A stretch of DNA of 64,000 nucleotides from Octopus bimaculoides (GCF_001194135.2 NC_068981.1:18408251-18472250), one strand, 5' to 3'; counted from the first letter of the stretch, positions 1 through 51,607 are shown. A program made the numbers and translations. Notes: generated by a model from the sequence alone, not told the origin.

Positions 1-420
1 TTTATGAGATGGCTGACCAATTCCCAAACATCAACGGAGATCTGTATTGTGACGATTGTCTACTCTACCTTCAAAATGTTTCTAACCAAAAATTACAAAA
101 GGTTAAAAATAGGTTGGTTAAATTTTTCCGAAACATGGGCTTAAGCATCGTTTCCAACGATGATATTACTAAAGCCAACTTTTTGGATAGTACCCTTAAC
201 TTACATAATGCTTCGTATTTCCCATACCATAAACTCTCAACTAATTTAAAATATATTAGCTCTTTCAGTAATCATCCAAAGGCTATTACAAGGAATTTAG
301 TTAGAAATATTTCACTTAGACTTTCTAGATTATCTGCCAATGTTGATACCTTCAACAATAAAACTGAATTTTATAACTCTGCCTTACTTAAAGCAGGCTA
401 TAAACAAAAATTACCTAATA

Positions 421-830
421 GGCGCAGGCATGGCTGTGTGGTAAGTAGCTTGCCTACCAACCACATGGTTCCGGGTTCAGTCCCATTGTGTGGCACCTTG
501 GGCAAGTATCTTTTACTATAGCTTCAGGCTGACCAAAGCCTTGTGGGTGGATTTTGTAGACGGAAACTGAAAGAAGTCCATCGTATATATGTATATATGT
601 ATGTGTGTGTATTTGTTTGTGTGTCTATGTTTGTCCCCCAACATCGCTTGACAACCGATGCTGGTGTGTTTATGTCCCTGTAACTTAGTGGTTCGGCAAA
701 AGAGAATGATAGAATAAGTACTAGGCTCACAAAGAATAAGTCCTGGGCTCGATTTCTTTGACAAAAGGCAGTGCTCCAGCATGGCCACAGTCAAATGACT
801 GAAACAAATAAAAGAGTAAAAGAGTAAAGA
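421..830 (+). mobile_element. tRNA-headed CORE-type SINE (family A) inserted in the PLE ORF
   Basis: A/B-box head TGGCTGTGTGGTAAG...GGTTCAGTCCC, CORE-like CCTTGGGCAAGT, internal microsatellite, and tail GCTCCAGCATGGCC.CAGTCAAATGACTGAAAC-(AAAGAGT)n. Confidence 0.85.
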
Positions 831-2027
831 GTATATTAATCCTATTGACATTAATTCTGCCTCTATTAATCAGGACATGAAAACACGTCGTACCGGTAAT
901 AGCAATATAAATTTTAGTTTGAATAACAACACTAAATTGAAAAATGTAATTTTGCAGCACAAGGGAAATAACCATTCTTTAAAACCCTTTTTAAATTATA
1001 AAAGTAAATATAGGACTTTTAAAGATAATTACCCTAATAACAAGGTATATCCTAGTAAAACTGTTTGGTTGATAATTCCATATGGTAAGCAGATCAAATC
1101 CAACTTCCCTGTGAAGTTATAGATAAGAATTTCCTCAAAAATTCAAGATACCATTCCATTATCAATTTACACCGAATTAGAATAGCATTTCCAAACACCA
1201 AAAACCTTTCACAAATGATCTCTTCGCATAATAATAAGTTGTTAAATACAAATCCACTTAATGAAAATAATAACATTGATATTACTGACACTAACCATTC
1301 TTTGAACAATAATAACAACAATATTAATATTTCTGATATTAATTTGAATCGCATTCGTTTGCTTAGCAGTAATTTTAAGACTTGAAACTCTGTTTATCAA
1401 TGTAAAATTACTTCCAATTCTGATGTCTTTTTTTTTACATAATTAGTTCTTCATCTCAGTTGTCCAAAAGAATATCTAACTATTACTCTACATTTAGTCA
1501 TATCAATACACACTACAATACTGGGCTTAGTAAATTAATTTGGTCTCTTAAGGAACATAATAAACAGTTTGATTTGGAATGGAATATTTTGTTTAAATCC
1601 TTTCCATATGATAAAAGTAAATCCTTTTGTCTGTTCTATAATGAAGAAGAGTATCTCATTCTGTTCTTGGAGAATTCTATTGTAAACATGTTTAAAGAAC
1701 ACATTTATCCCTACAAACATTGGCAAAAACATACCTTTAGTTCCTATAAGTAATTTCTACCAATCCATAAAATTTGACTTTTATCTGTCTTCTTACATTT
1801 TATTTCCACTACATATATCTATTTACATGCTTTTACCGCACTATATTTCTCCACTCTTAATTTTCTGTTAATTTCTTTCTTTCTCTTCCTTCTCTTTCTC
1901 TAAATTACCTTTGACGTTAAATCTATTAACAGTATTTAAAAAAAATAACTTTCCAGCGTTCCCTTCATCATATACATGGTAATCAGATTCAGTTAAAATG
2001 GCTTATTGAAGTGTTTTGTTTCTCTTT

Positions 2028-38798: not shown

Positions 38799-39400
38799 TA
38801 CATGTGTGTTATTTCTTTACGACCCACAATGGGCTACAACACACAGAGGGGACAAACAAGGACAGACAAACGGATTAAGTTGATTATATCGACCCAGTGC
38901 ATAACTGGTACTTATTTAATCGACCCCGTAAGGATGAAAGACAAAGTCGACCTTGGCGGAATTTGAACTCAGAACGCAGAGGCAGACGAATTACCTCTAA
39001 GCATTTCGCCCGGCGTGCTAACGTTTCTGCCAGCTTGCCACCTTATGTGTGCGTGCATGCGTGCGTGTATGTGTGTGTGTGTGTGCGCGTGCGTGTGTGT
39101 GTGTGTGTGTGTTTGTTTGTTGCCCACCCACTGCTCGAAAACTGATATAGGTTTACATTCCCTTAGCTTAGCAGTTTGGCAAAAGAAACTGATAGAATAC
39201 GAACCAAATTTTAGAAAGTGGCACATAAGTACCGGTGGTTAATTTGTTCAACTTAAACCCTCCAAAGTGTTGCCCCAACATGGCCACAGTCCAACGACTG
39301 AAACAAGTAACAGACAGGTAAAGAAGAGAAGGTTACTAGTTTGCTTTTATCCTCCATGCACCTCCAGATAACACAAGACTTTTCCTTTATCTTCCACCAG

Positions 39401-39538
39401 GTACTTCAGGAACGATCTCAGAAAGATTCAGAAGCCAAGGAGTTTTTAAATGAAAGACAAAATCTGTTTAATAATCAGCGGAAACGAACAGATGGAAACA
39501 AAAATTATAATGCTCTCAAATTTTTGCTGGAATATTAA
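39401..39538 (+). CDS. BAIAP3: BAIAP3/Munc13-4-like gene, terminal coding exon: VLQERSQKDSEAKEFLNERQNLFNNQRKRTDGNKNYNALKFLLEY*
   Basis: Acceptor tttcctttatcttccaccag|GTA in phase 0. VL.ER..D.EA.EF...R matches the family C-terminal helix. TAA at 39536-39538. The four exons sum to 606 nt in frame. Confidence 0.85.
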   Translation, partial: VLQERSQKDSEAKEFLNERQNLFNNQRKRTDGNKNYNALKFLLEY

Positions 39539-39606: not shown

Positions 39607-39678
39607 AATAAATTATTTTGTACTTTTCTAAAGCTGTCTGGGTTTATTTTTTCTTAAAATGTTCAAAATTTAAATAAA
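39607..39678 (+). promoter_or_regulatory. Candidate polyadenylation signals (AATAAA at 39607-39612 and 39673-39678)
   Basis: Hexamers about 70 and 135 nt after the stop codon. The context is AT-rich, so they may be chance matches. Confidence 0.25.
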
Positions 39679-39949: not shown

Positions 39950-40921
39950 TATTTTGTTTAAAAGAGTTCCAACACTGTCTGTTTTTTATGTTTTATTTAT
40001 ATTCCTGCAGAACCAATGTGGGATATAGAATATGGAATATACAATATATAATATAATATACAATATATAATATAAAATAAAATAAAATAAAAATGGATGG
40101 CACCATGAAATAAAGAATTGAATGTAGATGAAATATTGAGTGTTCAATATAAAGGATCAAATATATAAATATATANNNNNNNNNNNNNNNNNNNNNNNNN
40201 NNNNNNNNNNNNNNNNNNNNNNNNNNNNNNNNNNNNNNNNNNNNNNNNNNNNNNNNNNNNNNNNNNNNNNNNNNNNNNNNNNNNNNNNNNNNNNNNNNNN
40301 NNNNNNNNNNNNNNNNNNNNNNNNNNNNNNNNNNNNNNNNNNNNNNNNNNNNNNNNNNNNNNNNNNNNNNNNNNNNNNNNNNNNNNNNNNNNNNNNNNNN
40401 NNNNNNNNNNNNNNNNNNNNNNNNNNNNNNNNNNNNNNNNNNNNNNNNNNNNNNNNNNNNNNNNNNNNNNNNNNNNNNNNNNNNNNNNNNNNNNNNNNNN
40501 NNNNNNNNNNNNNNNNNNNNNNNNNNNNNNNNNNNNNNNNNNNNNNNNNNNNNNNNNNNNNNNNNNNNNNNNNNNNNNNNNNNNNNNATATATATATATA
40601 TAGTTAGTGGATCATATATCTGAAAAAGAAGTACACTCTAAAAGTTAGAGCAATAATGTATATATTATATAAATATAGGGGTTATGAGAGGTAATGGTGT
40701 CAAGAAGACCCAAAGGTGTCAGGTAATGCTTAGTAAGTGCTATGGACAGACTATAGTTAAGTTCCAGGTTCAGTAATTATGTGAATGTGGAGTCCAACGT
40801 AGGTCATATATCAGCATGTGTATATATAAAAAAATATATCAGCATGTGTGTATATAAAAAAATTAACAGAATGAGATAAAAATCCAAGGCTGTGAAAGAT
40901 TTCAGAACATTTATAAATAGG

Positions 40922-40969
40922 TCTTACAGCTGTTTCCAGGATATTTCATATGTATCCCTTCATCGGAGA
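40922..40969 (-). ncRNA. Minimal type-I hammerhead ribozyme (CCGAUGA core variant)
   Basis: Minus strand reads tct-CCGATGA-agggata(catatgaaa)tatcctg-GAAA-cagct-GTA-aga. Confidence 0.7.
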
Positions 40970-41370
40970 TGGTGTGAGAGAATGGTTAAGCAATAATTAT
41001 TCTAGGTAAGATATGAAATAGATAGTGAAGTGGAGGAATGAAAATAGATGTGAGATATGCAGGGATATTGTATCTTCAGTTCCATTATTTCGGCAGAATG
41101 GTATATATATATAAGATTCTTGTACCTTGTGAATAAACCCTCCATTCAATAACACCGTCTACAAACTCTATGCTTGGAATGACCAATTTTAAGTACTATT
41201 GGAACTTACTCACAAGGTACAAGAATCTTATATGTATGCCATTCTGCCAAAATAATAGAACTACAGATACAATATCCCTGCATATCTCATGTCTATTTTC
41301 ATTCCTCTACTTCACTCTCTATTTCATATCTTATCTAGAATAACTATTGCTTAACCATTTTCTCACACCA

Positions 41371-41416
41371 TCTCTGATGAAGGGATATATAAAATATCCT
41401 GGAAACAGCTGTAAGA
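41371..41416 (+). ncRNA. Minimal type-I hammerhead ribozyme
   Basis: tct-CTGATGA-agggata(tataaaa)tatcctg-GAAA-cagct-GTA-aga. Intact core, 6-bp stem II, palindromic stem III (acagctgt), predicted cleavage after A41413. Confidence 0.8.
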
Positions 41417-41696
41417 CCTTCTATTTATAAAATGTCAGGTCACCAATGAGGCTCTACATGTCAGGTCACCTATGAGGCTCACATAAATGCTACTGGTAAC
41501 ATGTAATCCAGCACAACCTGTTGCATGGTCGGGTTGCCAGCGACTAACCTGGCACCCCCCACCAGGCTACCCTGGTGAGGAGGGTTGCTAGAAACCCAGC
41601 AGGATTAAAAACAAGACCTGTTGAAAGCTCGGATGGACCTAGTGCAGGCTCAACGGCTATCTAGCAATAGCATGGGTATGCAATCATGTTTGGATT

Positions 41697-41730
<34 letters not shown>

Positions 41731-42531
41731 NNNNNNNNNNNNNNNNNNNNNNNNNNNNNNNNNNNNNNNNNNNNNNNNNNNNNNNNNNNNNNNNNNNNNN
41801 NNNNNNNNNNNNNNNNNNNNNNNNNNNNNNNNNNNNNNNNNNNNNNNNNNNNNNNNNNNNNNNNNNNNNNNNNNNNNNNNNNNNNNNNNNNNNNNNNNNN
41901 NNNNNNNNNNNNNNNNNNNNNNNNNNNNNNNNNNNNNNNNNNNNNNNNNNNNNNNNNNNNNNNNNNNNNNNNNNNNNNNNNNNNNNNNNNNNNNNNNNNN
42001 NNNNNNNNNNNNNNNNNNNNNNNNNNNNNNNNNNNNNNNNNNNNNNNNNNNNNNNNNNNNNNNNNNNNNNNNNNNNNNNNNNNNNNNNNNNNNNNNNNNN
42101 NNNNNNNNNNNNNNNNNNNNNNNNNNNNNNNNNNNNNNNNNNNNNNNNNNNNNNNNNNNNNNNNNNNNNNNNNNNNNNNNNNNNNNNNNNNNNNNNNNNN
42201 NNNNNNNNNNNNNNNNNNNNNNNNNNNNNNNNNNNNNNNNNNNNNNNNNNNNNNNNNNNNNNNNNNNNNNNNNNNNNNNNNNNNNNNNNNNNNNNNNNNN
42301 NNNNNNNNNNNNNNNNNNNNNNNNNNNNNNNNNNNNNNNNNNNNNNNNNNNNNNNNNNNNNNNNNNNNNNNNNNNNNNNNNNNNNNNNNNNNNNNNNNNN
42401 NNNNNNNNNNNNNNNNNNNNNNNNNNNNNNNNNNNNNNNNNNNNNNNNNNNNNNNNNNNNNNNNNNNNNNNNNNNNNNNNNNNNNAAATAACAAAAGTAT
42501 ATATTAGTATGACGCTCGGGAATACGGAAAG

Positions 42532-42568: not shown

Positions 42569-44479
42569 ATACGGAGACAAGGAGAAAAACACGGAGAAAA
42601 AAAATTGAATAGTGTTCAGTCAACGGTCAATCATGTGTGTGTGTTTGTGTGTCTGTGTTTGTCCCCCCACCATCGCTTGACAACCGATGCTGGTGTGTTT
42701 ACGTCCCCGTAACTTAGCGGTTCGGCACAAAGAGACCGATAGAATAAGTACTAGGCTTACAAAGAATAAGTTCTGAGGTCGATTTGCTCGACTAAAGGCG
42801 GTGCTCCAGCATGGCTGCAGTCAAAATGACTGAAACTAGTAAAAGATAGTAAGAGACCCGCTACTAGAAGGAAGTTACCTTTATCTGGCCCAAATATTAC
42901 ATTGTGCATATCTGTGTATTATACACAGTATTAAATTCTTCATAGTTTATTATGCAATGTCTAAGCAATATACTGCAAATCTCATTGTGACATATGCGAT
43001 ATTAAAATCATTTCTCAAGTGCACTGCAACATATATCGTAGTATCCAAGTGATAAAGCTATCATGCAACATCTGTCATAGCTGATATGACACAGACTGCA
43101 TGCAATTTGCATCAGGTTGCATATATTGAAATGCTGCACGATCCGTACATGCAATTGTAATGCAGTATTCAGTGCATTATATAATTTTATCGTTTATTTG
43201 TTTCGGTCATTGAACTGTGGCCATGCTGGAGTCACTGCCCTGAAGGTTTTTATTCAAATTGACCTCAGGGAGTTATTATGTTTTTAAGGTTAGCGTTTAG
43301 TGTTTGGTGTTTAATGTATTGTTCTCTTTTGTTGTACTGCTAAGTTACAGGGAAGCAGACAAACCAGCGACTGTTGTCACATGGTGAGTAGACAAAGCCA
43401 AGCACACACACACACACACACACNNNNNNNNNNNNNNNNNNNNNNNNNNNNNNNNNNNNNNNNNNNNNNNNNNNNNNNNNNNNNNNNNNNNNNNNNNNNN
43501 NNNNNNNNNNNNNNNNNNNNNNNNNNNNNNNNNNNNNNNNNNNNNNNNNNNNNNNNNNNNNNNNNNNNNNNNNNNNNNNNNNNNNNNNNNNNNNNNNNNN
43601 NNNNNNNNNNNNNNNNNNNNNNNNNNNNNNNNNNNNNNNNNNNNNNNNNNNNNNNNNNNNNNNNNNNNNNNNNNNNNNNNNNNNNNNNNNNNNNNNNNNN
43701 NNNNNNNNNNNNNNNNNNNNNNNNNNNNNNNNNNNNNNNNNNNNNNNNNNNNNNNNNNNNNNNNNNNNNNNNNNNNNNNNNNNNNNNNNNNNNNNNNNNN
43801 NNNNNNNNNNNNNNNNNNNNNNNNNNNNNNNNNNNNNNNNNNNNNNNNNNNNNNNNNNNNNNNNNNNNNNNNNNNNNNNNNNNNNNNNNNNNNNNNNNNN
43901 NNNNNNNNNNNNNNNNNNNNNNNNNNNNNNNNNNNNNNNNNNNCACTTACACACACACACACACACACACACGTGCATACACAAATATGATAGGCTTCCA
44001 CACAGTTTCTTATTTCTTTATTGCCCACAAGGGGCTAAACATAGAGGGGACAAACAAGGACAGACAAAGGGATTAAGTGCATAACTGGTGCTTAATTTAT
44101 CAACCCTGAAAGGATGAAAGACAAAGTCAACCTCGGTGGAATTTGAACTCAGAACATAAAGACAGATGAAATACTACTAAGCATTATGCCCGGTGTACTA
44201 ACGTCTCTGCCAGCTCACCGCCTTCCACACAGTTTCTGTTTACCAAATTCACTTACAAAACACTGGTGGGGGCAGGGCTATAGCAGAAGAGTACTTCCCC
44301 AAGTGACATGAACCAGAACTGAACCTGAAACCATGCGGATGCAAAGCAAGTTCCTTAACCACACAGCCATATGTGCACCTTCATCTGTATTACAATCTAC
44401 CCCACAAAAAGTGATGATACATTTATACATATGCTGCTGTTGCACCTGACATTGCACCAAACACTGCCACTGCAAAAAA

Positions 44480-50475: not shown

Positions 50476-50512
50476 AAAAAGAAAATGGAGGGGATACAAA
50501 AATGACATACAT

Positions 50513-50640
50513 CAGCTGGTAGACCTTCTATTATGTCTACTTATTCTAAAACATAATCATCATCATCATCATCATCATCGTTGATGATGATGATGATTAT
50601 GTTTTAGAATAAGTAGACATAATAGAAGGTCTACCAGCTG
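50513..50640. repeat. Perfect 59-bp-arm palindrome with 10-nt spacer
   Basis: 50513-50571 is the exact reverse complement of 50582-50640. Confidence 0.9.
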
Positions 50641-51607
50641 TATAATACATACACATGCAAAGACTGTGTGTTACACAAATATATGCTGCTGCTACTACTA
50701 CTAGTACTACTACTACTACTACTAGGTGGTGGTGGTGGTGGTGGTGGTGGTGATGGTGGTGGTGGTGGTGGTGATGATGATTGTGATGCTAATGATGATG
50801 AAGATGATGATGATGATGATGAAGGTGATGATGATGAAGATGACAGTGGTGATCATTATGATGAAGGTGATGATGATGATGATGAAGAAAGTGATGATGA
50901 CGATGGGGATGATGATGACGATGACAACAATGGTGATCATGATGATGATGAAGGTGATGATGACAACGGTGAAGCTGATGATGGTGATCATGATGATGAT
51001 GATGAGGAGGTTGATGATAATGATGATGGTGATGATGATGACGGTGATGATGATGATAAATGAACTAATAAGTTGCTACACTTTCCACTCTTATTCCCAT
51101 GTCCACTGTCCACCTCGTCTCTGAAGACAATTCAATGCATTAAAACTTTTAATGGTGGACTGGCAGAATTGTTAAAGCATCAAACAAAATATGGTTTCGT
51201 ACTTAAACCACAAAACTGCCTAAAAGCATATTTTGAAAATAGACATTTTAATGTCACTTTTTTTAAATATATTGTTGAAGCCATAGGGAAAAAGGAAATT
51301 TTCCAAAACTGGTACAAAGCCAATCCCTTCAATACTACTCCCCTTCTTTTAGTTGAGGGGGAGGTTTGTTTTGACCCTGTCAGCGTTGGTGCCACATAAA
51401 ATGTACTGGTGCTGGTGCCATGTAAAAAGCACCCGTTACACTCTGTAAAATGGTTGGTGTTAGGGAGGGTATCCAGCTGTGGAAACCAAGTTAAAACAGA
51501 CTAGGGAACCTGGTGTGGCCCCACTGGCTTTGCCAGTTCTTGTGAAACTGTCCAAAATGGGAAAATGTTGGACAGCATGGAAAATGGACATAAAATGATA
51601 ACAAAGG

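What the first reader, a model, noticed from the sequence alone, without database searches (positions are those of the whole stretch)
40908..41435. Inverted twin-ribozyme cassette just downstream of the host gene's stop codon
Seen: a 230-bp inverted repeat with a 69-nt spacer and a hammerhead near each outer end (intact at 41371 on +; CCGAUGA variant at 40922 on -), 1.4-1.9 kb past the TAA at 39538. Established: PLE insertions often form inverted pseudo-LTR structures. Inference: read-through or long-3'UTR transcripts of the BAIAP3-like gene could either fold a 230-bp dsRNA hairpin (ADAR or Dicer substrate) or fold the + strand ribozyme and cleave after 41413. These folds are mutually exclusive because the ribozyme lies in the hairpin arm, so this could act as an RNA switch for 3'-end formation.
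Basis: partly seen in the sequence, partly recalled or inferred. Interest (0 to 1): 0.7.

Follow-up and report, generated by a model that had tools for sequence, protein, structure and literature searches.

The report
Inverted retroelement ends with hammerhead-like motifs
This is most likely a dead, head-to-head pair of transposon tail fragments, each carrying a minimal Penelope-type hammerhead-like motif; it lies in intergenic DNA past the gene's likely poly(A) sites, and nothing suggests it acts as an RNA switch.

Summary
Two 230-nt arms (40907-41136 and 41206-41435) form an inverted repeat around a 69-nt spacer. They are 93% identical at aligned positions. A hammerhead-like motif sits 22 nt from each outer end. 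The right copy (+) has every conserved core base. The left copy (-) has U4->C.

"Intact" is too strong. An extra G lies between helix II and G12. Helix I is only 3 bp, and helix III is a 2-bp palindromic stub. No Rfam hammerhead model matches either copy, even at E<=10 on 100-nt slices. The layout fits the dimer-dependent, weakly active "min-HHRs" of Penelope-like elements, which are already reported as pairs on opposite strands 100-700 bp apart.

The switch idea is not supported. Freeing the ribozyme from the hairpin costs about 81 kcal/mol. Each transcript would carry only one sense copy. AATAAA signals lie 69 and 135 nt after the stop codon, and conservation with Argonauta ends 94 nt after it.

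The element sits on a 1143-bp contig between two N gaps, so its distance from the gene and its orientation are uncertain.

Penelope-like origin could not be proven. No further copy or linked RT ORF was reachable.

Verdict: an ordinary transposon relic of a known kind, of low interest.

The parts
40907..41136 (-). Left arm of the inverted repeat: a 5'-truncated copy of the repeat unit, with its 3' end pointing left
   Evidence: Local and global alignment to the right arm: 210 of 226 aligned positions identical, 8 gap columns
40922..40969 (-). Left hammerhead-like motif, degenerate. It has CCGAUGA (U4->C; C3 = 40966), a helix II of about 6 bp, GAAA = 40936-40933, the palindrome ACAGCUGU, and a nominal cleavage site between 40925 and 40924.
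   Evidence: Sequence read directly. Differences from the right copy are listed. No Rfam hammerhead hit.
41137..41205 (.). 69-nt spacer (hairpin loop). It may be extra 5' sequence of the right-hand copy, because the frame 41137-41343 is open for 68 codons.
   Evidence: The peptide from this frame has no real homologues.
41206..41435 (+). Right arm of the inverted repeat: a 5'-truncated copy, with its 3' end pointing right
41371..41416 (+). Right hammerhead-like motif with a complete conserved core. Helix I is UCU/AGA (41371-73 / 41414-16). CUGAUGA is 41374-80. A41381 and G41401 flank a 7-bp helix II (41382-88 / 41394-41400, loop AUAAA). GAAA is 41402-05. Helix III is AC-AGCU-GU (41405-12). H17 = A41413, so the nominal cleavage site is after 41413.
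   Evidence: It is the only such site in the window. A relaxed descriptor found 0 hits in 300 simulated windows. There is no Rfam hammerhead hit. The monomer fold is not the minimum-energy fold, and the homodimer forms an 8-bp helix III.
40176..40587 (.). Assembly gap (412 N) between the host gene's 3' end and the contig that carries the repeat
41731..42485 (.). Assembly gap (755 N) on the other side of the 1143-bp contig 40588-41730. Both contig ends are (TA)n runs.

Best explanation
The feature is a decayed transposon relic. It consists of two 5'-truncated 3'-terminal fragments (about 230 and 230-299 nt) of one hammerhead-bearing retroelement, joined head-to-head so that their 3' ends, each with a minimal hammerhead motif 22 nt from the tip, point outwards. 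This is the arrangement produced by Penelope-like elements, where an inverted 5'-truncated copy abuts a pseudo-LTR, or by non-autonomous elements that use PLE machinery.

In the parent element the motif would act only when two sense copies pair through the palindromic ACAGCUGU to build helix III. This locus has one sense copy per strand. One copy carries U4->C, and both carry an unusual extra G next to G12. Self-cleavage here is therefore unlikely.

Any transcript crossing the locus would fold into a ~230-bp imperfect hairpin. That is a generic property of inverted repeats and gives no evidence of a regulatory device.

Shown: the repeat, the motif anatomy, the energetics, the gaps, and the absence of Rfam support. 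Inferred: PLE ancestry, lack of activity, and lack of transcription.
For: The geometry and divergence of the repeat are established.

The motif has all conserved core bases and is non-random: 1 hit in the window against 0 in 300 simulated windows.

Its architecture matches published PLE min-HHR traits. These are a 7-8 bp helix II, a short helix I (2 bp in D. virilis), a nucleotide after A9, a small palindromic helix III, dependence on dimers, low in vitro activity, and 'dual min-HHRs ... ~100-700 bp ... in opposite strands' (PMC4209133). HHRs lie near PLE 3' ends and in pLTRs, and inverted 5'-truncated copies are typical and break short-read assemblies (PMC8557442; PMC6765202).

The predicted homodimer does form the 8-bp helix III.

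The 14 transition differences between the arms give 8 G.U and 6 A.C pairs on the + strand. There is therefore no strand-specific preservation of the hairpin (derived).

The repeat is absent from 10 kb downstream of the Argonauta hians orthologue.
Against: No RT or GIY-YIG ORF is linked to the arms. The only long frame in the arms has no homologues among 1.84 billion representative proteins or in Pfam.

No second copy of the arm was found in the window, in the Argonauta locus, or in the metagenome and viral collections. Family status and copy number are therefore untested.

The G10.1-C11.1 pair described as highly conserved in PLE min-HHRs is replaced by A.G with an extra G.

Rfam hammerhead models do not recognise either copy.

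Both arms are truncated at the same point. That would also fit a local inverted duplication or a foldback/MITE-type element.
Confidence: 0.62

Rival explanations
1. It is a non-autonomous hammerhead-bearing element (retrozyme-like or SINE-like, as with Schistosoma Sm-alpha or metazoan non-LTR retrozymes), or a foldback/MITE-like DNA element whose long terminal inverted repeats captured a hammerhead-containing segment. It would not be a fragment of an autonomous PLE.
For: The arms have no coding similarity. Both arms end at the same inner point. Helix III with 2 bp and a palindromic tetraloop is also the usual invertebrate type-I layout in retrozymes (PMC7229834).
Against: Retrozymes are direct tandem repeats with a canonical 6-bp helix I, a 4-bp helix II and loop-loop contacts. 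Here the copies are inverted, helix II is 7 bp and helix I is 3 bp. No target-site duplication flanks 40907/41435.
Confidence: 0.2
2. It is a chance hammerhead look-alike inside an ordinary local inverted duplication, with no ribozyme ancestry.
For: No Rfam hammerhead hit at any threshold tried. The helix II/G12 junction is non-canonical and helix I is 3 bp. The monomer fold is unstable. The two copies are duplicates of each other, so they count as one event.
Against: A relaxed descriptor gave 0 hits in 300 simulated windows. The palindromic helix III, the long helix II and the position near the outer ends all coincide with the published PLE pattern.
Confidence: 0.1
3. Read-through or long-3'UTR transcripts of the Munc13-4/BAIAP3-like gene choose between a dsRNA hairpin (an ADAR or Dicer substrate) and ribozyme cleavage after 41413, which sets the 3' end.
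For: The hairpin would certainly form if the region is transcribed. A core-complete motif lies on the + strand as currently scaffolded. A hammerhead in a 3'UTR has a precedent in mammalian Clec2 genes (Martick et al. 2008, cited; the details are from my own knowledge).
Against: The hairpin is favoured by about 81 kcal/mol. There is one sense copy per transcript, but the motif type needs a dimer. PAS hexamers lie at 39607 and 39673, and cross-species conservation ends at 39632. A gap of unknown size separates the gene from the contig, and the contig's orientation is unverified. The repeat is absent at the Argonauta orthologous locus. The hairpin shows no strand-specific preservation.
Confidence: 0.03
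4. It is an assembly artefact: a chimeric palindrome, or a contig placed at the wrong locus.
For: The 1143-bp contig lies between two N gaps and has (TA)n at both ends. The adjacent conserved block (41488-41621) is in the opposite orientation to its Argonauta counterpart.
Against: The arms differ by 16 substitutions and 4 indel events (8 gap columns) and enclose a unique 69-nt spacer. Artefactual palindromes are near-perfect. The conserved block also lies downstream of the same gene in Argonauta, which weakly supports the placement.
Confidence: 0.05

Closest known systems
Minimal hammerhead ribozymes (min-HHRs) in the pseudo-LTRs of metazoan Penelope-like elements (Cervera & de la Pena 2014, PMC4209133)
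   Same: Type-I layout, a long helix II (7 bp), a very short helix I, an unpaired or extra base right after A9, and a small palindromic helix III that can only be completed in a dimer. The motif lies close to the element's end. It also occurs as two motifs on opposite strands a few hundred bp apart.
   Different: An extra G lies before G12, so A.G replaces the conserved G10.1-C11.1 pair. No PLE ORF is linked. Family-level covariation could not be examined. One copy has U4->C.
Complex tandem/inverted insertion structure of PLEs (Evgen'ev & Arkhipova 2005; Craig et al. 2021, PMC8557442)
   Same: 5'-truncated copies are joined head-to-head to form an inverted repeat, in a region that a short-read assembly could not close.
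   Different: There is no full-length unit or tandem pLTR next to it. Both copies are extremely short and no 30-40 bp 'tail' could be identified. The gaps here are explained by flanking (TA)n runs, as at many other gaps in the window.
Metazoan non-LTR retrozymes (Cervera & de la Pena 2020, PMC7229834)
   Same: AT-rich, non-coding units of a few hundred nt with a type-I hammerhead whose helix III is 2 bp plus a palindromic tetraloop.
   Different: Retrozymes are direct tandem arrays with canonical helices I and II and loop-loop contacts, and they give circRNAs. This is a single inverted pair with a minimal-type motif.
Inverted-repeat transposon pairs as dsRNA/ADAR substrates, such as inverted Alu pairs in mammalian 3'UTRs (own knowledge)
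   Same: A ~230-bp imperfect intramolecular duplex would form in any transcript that crosses it.
   Different: There is no evidence that this locus is transcribed or lies within the 3'UTR.

Membership tests
Hammerhead ribozyme (Rfam Hammerhead_1/3/II/HH9/HH10 models) | A match to a curated covariance model | tested here: not met
   No hammerhead family was reported at gathering score on the whole window. None was reported at E<=10 on 40600-41720, 41345-41445 or 40895-41000.
Hammerhead ribozyme (any type) | Conserved core: C3 U4 G5 A6 N7 G8 A9, G12 A13 A14, A15.1-U16.1, H17 not G | tested here: met
   The right copy has all of them: CUGAUGA 41374-80, GAAA 41402-05, U41412, A41413. The left copy fails at U4 (C).
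Hammerhead ribozyme (any type) | Self-cleavage at H17 | not testable with these tools
   This needs in vitro transcription. The predicted monomer structure is only -2.9 kcal/mol and is not the minimum-energy fold.
PLE min-HHR (Cervera & de la Pena 2014) | Long helix II (6-8 bp) and short helix I (2-5 bp) | tested here: met
   Helix II is 7 bp (41382-88 / 41394-41400). Helix I is 3 bp (UCU/AGA).
PLE min-HHR | An extra nucleotide between A9 and 10.1, together with a conserved G10.1-C11.1 pair abutting G12 | tested here: inconclusive
   The extra A41381 is present. However, G41382 pairs with U41400, and a further G41401 separates helix II from G12. Read another way, 10.1/11.1 is an A.G mismatch. 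Both arms share this.
PLE min-HHR | Palindromic 15.2-16.2 / loop 3 that allows a dimeric helix III | tested here: met
   ACAGCUGU (41405-12) is self-complementary. RNAcofold of two copies forms the 8-bp intermolecular helix.
PLE min-HHR | Consensus families with covariation among many genomic copies | not testable with these tools
No further copy was found in the window, the Argonauta locus, or the metagenome and viral collections.
Penelope-like element (insertion) | Linkage to an ORF with a telomerase-like RT and a GIY-YIG endonuclease, with the motif in its pLTR | tested here: not met
   There is no such ORF on the 1143-bp contig. The only long frame has no homologues. The flanking sequence is lost in gaps, so absence is not proof.
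Penelope-like element (insertion) | 5'-truncated copies in a tandem and/or inverted arrangement | tested here: met
   Head-to-head arms with 3' ends pointing outward, matching the description.
Metazoan non-LTR retrozyme | Direct tandem repeats of 150-450 bp, each with a canonical type-I HHR (6-bp helix I, 4-bp helix II, loop-loop contacts) | tested here: not met
   The copies are inverted and not tandem, and the helix sizes are non-canonical (compared).

The most novel reading that the evidence does not exclude
The contig is correctly placed and oriented, and long or read-through transcripts of the Munc13-4/BAIAP3-like gene reach it. The 230-bp hairpin is then used in this octopod as an ADAR or small-RNA substrate. 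Alternatively, with a chaperone or a second transcript, the + strand hammerhead contributes an alternative 3' end at 41413.
Probability: 0.03. Interest if true: 0.6.

Novelty: new member of a known kind. Interest (0 to 1): 0.15.

Why it matters
It matters little beyond annotation. Minimal hammerheads at Penelope-like element ends are already known to be very abundant in invertebrate genomes, including as pairs on opposite strands. This would add one decayed octopod example. Two practical lessons follow. Rfam models miss this class, so a core-plus-helix descriptor is needed to annotate it. A hammerhead inside an inverted repeat should not be read as a switch without checking the energetics and whether the locus is transcribed. 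If the locus were shown to be transcribed and processed, it would be a rare case of a transposon ribozyme or hairpin co-opted at a neuronal gene in a heavily RNA-editing animal. Nothing here points that way.

Tried and rejected
1. Rfam at gathering score and at E<=10, on the contig and on 100-nt slices, gave no hammerhead. The only hits were weak miRNA-like matches to the generic hairpin, plus TtnuCD8 and Pistol noise.

2. I looked for other copies of the arm. None is in the window apart from a marginal 21-nt match to another palindrome at about 50.5 kb. None is in the 28-kb Argonauta orthologous locus or the Logan contigs. Exact-pattern scans of metagenome contigs (two patterns) and viral contigs gave nothing related. 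The single metagenome hit, L006, is a chance match inside a bacterial coding gene whose product resembles a glycoside hydrolase (my reading of the sequence, not tested).

3. I tested whether the inner part of the arms is the C-terminus of a retroelement ORF. The 68-codon frame contains a C..C...H...C-like pattern. phmmer against 1.84 billion representatives gave only two repetitive junk hits, and Pfam gave none. Rejected.

4. I tried to obtain octopod PLE loci from the ORF at window 3-518, which I suspected from memory to be a PLE RT. Only three short Logan ORFs matched, with no Pfam or PDB support, on contigs of about 1.2 kb without hammerheads. This did not help.

5. I asked whether the conserved block right of the repeat is the 5' end of a PLE. 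There is no RT-like ORF next to its Argonauta copy. Rejected.

6. The paper by Lunse, Weinberg & Breaker on PLE hammerhead dimers is not held. Two literature searches timed out.

Full report
**What is there**

The region lies on a 1143-bp contig (40588-41730). It is bounded by N gaps at 40176-40587 (412 N) and 41731-42485 (755 N), and both contig ends are (TA)n runs.

Within the contig, gapped alignment defines a left arm at 40907-41136 and a right arm at 41206-41435, separated by 69 nt. The arms show 210 matches, 16 mismatches (14 transitions, 2 transversions) and 8 gap columns. That is 92.9% identity at aligned positions and 89.7% over all columns. As RNA the region folds into a single hairpin of -344.3 kcal/mol, with z = -37.7.

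The divergence, the indels and the unique spacer make a palindromic assembly artefact unlikely. Placement and orientation of this small contig in the scaffold remain unverified.

**The hammerhead-like motifs**

On the + strand the right arm reads as follows:
- UCU (41371-73)
- CUGAUGA (41374-80)
- A, then GGGAUAU-AUAAA-AUAUCCU, then G (41381-41401)
- GAAA (41402-05)
- the palindrome ACAGCUGU (41405-12)
- A41413, followed by AGA (41414-16)

The left arm carries the same motif on the - strand (40969-40922), but with CCGAUGA (U4->C) and a slightly altered helix II and loop.

It is the only CUGANGA...GAAA site in the window with a credible helix II. A relaxed descriptor allowed one extra base on either side of helix II. 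It required helix II of at least 5 bp, a short or palindromic helix III and helix I of at least 3 bp. It hits this site once and hits nothing in 300 first-order Markov simulations of the window. The descriptor was relaxed after seeing the site, so that figure is generous, but the motif is not plausibly random.

"Intact" overstates the case:
- An extra G (41401) sits between helix II and G12, so the position of the usually conserved G10.1-C11.1 pair is occupied by A.G.
- Helix I is 3 bp.
- Helix III is 2 bp plus a tetraloop.
- The explicit monomer ribozyme structure is worth only -2.9 kcal/mol, and RNAfold prefers other folds.
- No Rfam hammerhead model reports either copy at gathering score or at E<=10, even on 100-nt slices.

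**What it resembles**

Cervera & de la Pena (2014) described the "min-HHRs" of metazoan Penelope-like elements (PLEs). These have a helix II of 7-8 bp, a short helix I (2 bp in D. virilis), a nucleotide inserted after A9 and a palindromic helix III or loop 3. A single motif showed no detectable activity, activity as a dimer was low, and sequence variability was very large.

In Schistosoma they also noted [quoted passage not shown], probably from truncated PLEs. Craig et al. (2021) describe PLE insertions as highly 5'-truncated, often with an inverted 5'-truncated copy abutting the pLTR. Hammerheads lie in pLTRs near the 3' ends, and the authors note that such structures break short-read assemblies.

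The present feature is two short 3'-terminal fragments joined head-to-head, with a minimal hammerhead 22 nt from each outer end. It fits this description. RNAcofold of two sense copies forms the expected 8-bp intermolecular helix III from ACAGCUGU.

Metazoan non-LTR retrozymes share the 2-bp/tetraloop helix III. They are, however, direct tandem arrays with canonical helices I and II, which is not the case here.

**Limits of the PLE assignment**

I could not link the arms to any RT/GIY-YIG ORF.
- The contig has no such ORF.
- The one long frame (41137-41343, 68 codons) has no real homologue among 1.84 billion representative proteins or in Pfam.
- No further copy of the arm exists in the window, in the Argonauta locus or the Logan contigs, or in the scanned public collections. 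The one pattern hit is a chance match inside a bacterial coding gene.

Family-level covariation, the strongest published criterion, is therefore untested. A retrozyme-like, SINE-like or foldback origin, or even a look-alike motif, remains possible.

**The host gene and the transcript question**

The + strand gene ends at TAA 39536-39538. Its last exons encode a C-terminal C2 domain. The Argonauta hians orthologue fragment (78% identity) aligns across its C-terminal region with residues 926-1102 of the 1118-residue human Munc13-4. "Munc13-4/BAIAP3-like" is therefore a reasonable label.

Exons align between the window and the Argonauta locus at 73-81% identity. Similarity around the last exon stops at 39632, which is 94 nt past the stop. 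AATAAA hexamers lie at 39607 and 39673. The mRNA therefore probably ends about 100-150 nt after the stop. That is more than 1.2 kb, plus microsatellites and a gap of unknown true size, before the repeat. This is an inference, because no RNA data were reachable.

The repeat is absent from the 10 kb downstream of the Argonauta gene. At that evolutionary distance this says only that the repeat is not a deeply conserved element.

**The "RNA switch" idea**

- Folding 40900-41363 and 41364-41445 separately gives -263.6 kcal/mol, against -344.3 for the full hairpin. The penalty for freeing the ribozyme segment is about 81 kcal/mol.
- The left arm is transcribed first and the ribozyme is the last segment to emerge, beside a helix that is already nucleated.
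- This class of hammerhead needs a second sense copy. An inverted pair gives each transcript one sense and one antisense copy.
- The transition differences between the arms give 8 G.U and 6 A.C pairs on the + strand, and the reverse on the - strand. There is no sign of selection to keep the hairpin on either strand (derived).

That a transcript would form dsRNA is true of any inverted repeat. It needs evidence of transcription before it means anything.

**Verdict**

The best explanation is an inert head-to-head pair of hammerhead-bearing retroelement ends of the PLE type. The regulatory interpretation is unsupported. The kind is already described in the literature, and this is at most a new member of it.

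Noticed in passing
window 41458-41650 (+), core 41488-41621; Argonauta locus L001 24096-24228 (-): A GC-rich block abuts the right end of the repeat. It is 80% identical over 134 nt to a block about 5.8 kb downstream of the orthologous gene in Argonauta hians, which is as conserved as the coding exons. It lies in the opposite orientation there. Several predicted hairpins keep pairing through double changes between the two species, for example CACCAGG-CUAC-CCUGGUG against CACUCAG-UUUG-CUGGGUG. It has no Rfam or tRNA match and no adjacent RT ORF. It could be a SINE-like repeat or a conserved non-coding RNA. If it is orthologous, the contig 40588-41730 may be inverted in the scaffold.
   Followed up: partly
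window 41432-41480: A 26-nt tandem duplication, ATGTCAGGTCACC[A/T]ATGAGGCTC, sits exactly at the junction between the right arm and the conserved block. The sequence is single-copy in Argonauta. The first ATGT is shared with the arm's end. This may be a junction or microhomology footprint, but it is unexplained.
   Followed up: partly
window 50508-50643: A second, smaller palindrome has an (ATC)n/(GAT)n centre. Its outer ends carry ACAGCTGGTAGACCTTCTATT, which is 19/21 identical to the helix III/cleavage-site/helix I segment of the focal arms, but oriented towards the centre. Significance is marginal: 1 of 500 shuffles reached the score. It may be a decayed relative of the same family.
   Followed up: partly
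window 3-518 (+), also 1089-1750 (+): An open frame at the window start (YCDDCLL...FLDSTL...SNHP...) looked to me like a Penelope-type RT tail. This rests on memory only. Its only database relatives are three short unnamed Logan ORFs (57-71% identity), and it has no Pfam or PDB match. No hammerhead core follows it.
   Followed up: partly
window 53066-53491 (-): An ORF fragment has a weak RVT_1 match (E = 0.0014, below Pfam's cutoff) and an FIDLTKAF motif. It is probably a LINE-type reverse transcriptase remnant.
   Followed up: no
window gaps, e.g. 17344, 25186, 34404, 40587, 41731, 48168, 56218: Many of the 13 N gaps are flanked by (TA)n runs, so (TA)n microsatellites are probably what broke this short-read assembly. 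The gaps around the focal contig have (TA)n flanks like these, so they do not point to anything particular about the repeat.
   Followed up: no
window 39093-39324 and 42635-42856 (+): Two copies (78% identity over the matched pieces) of another interspersed repeat that begins after a (GT)n run. One lies in the last intron and one lies beyond the second gap. Translations of similar repeats recur many times across the window.
   Followed up: no
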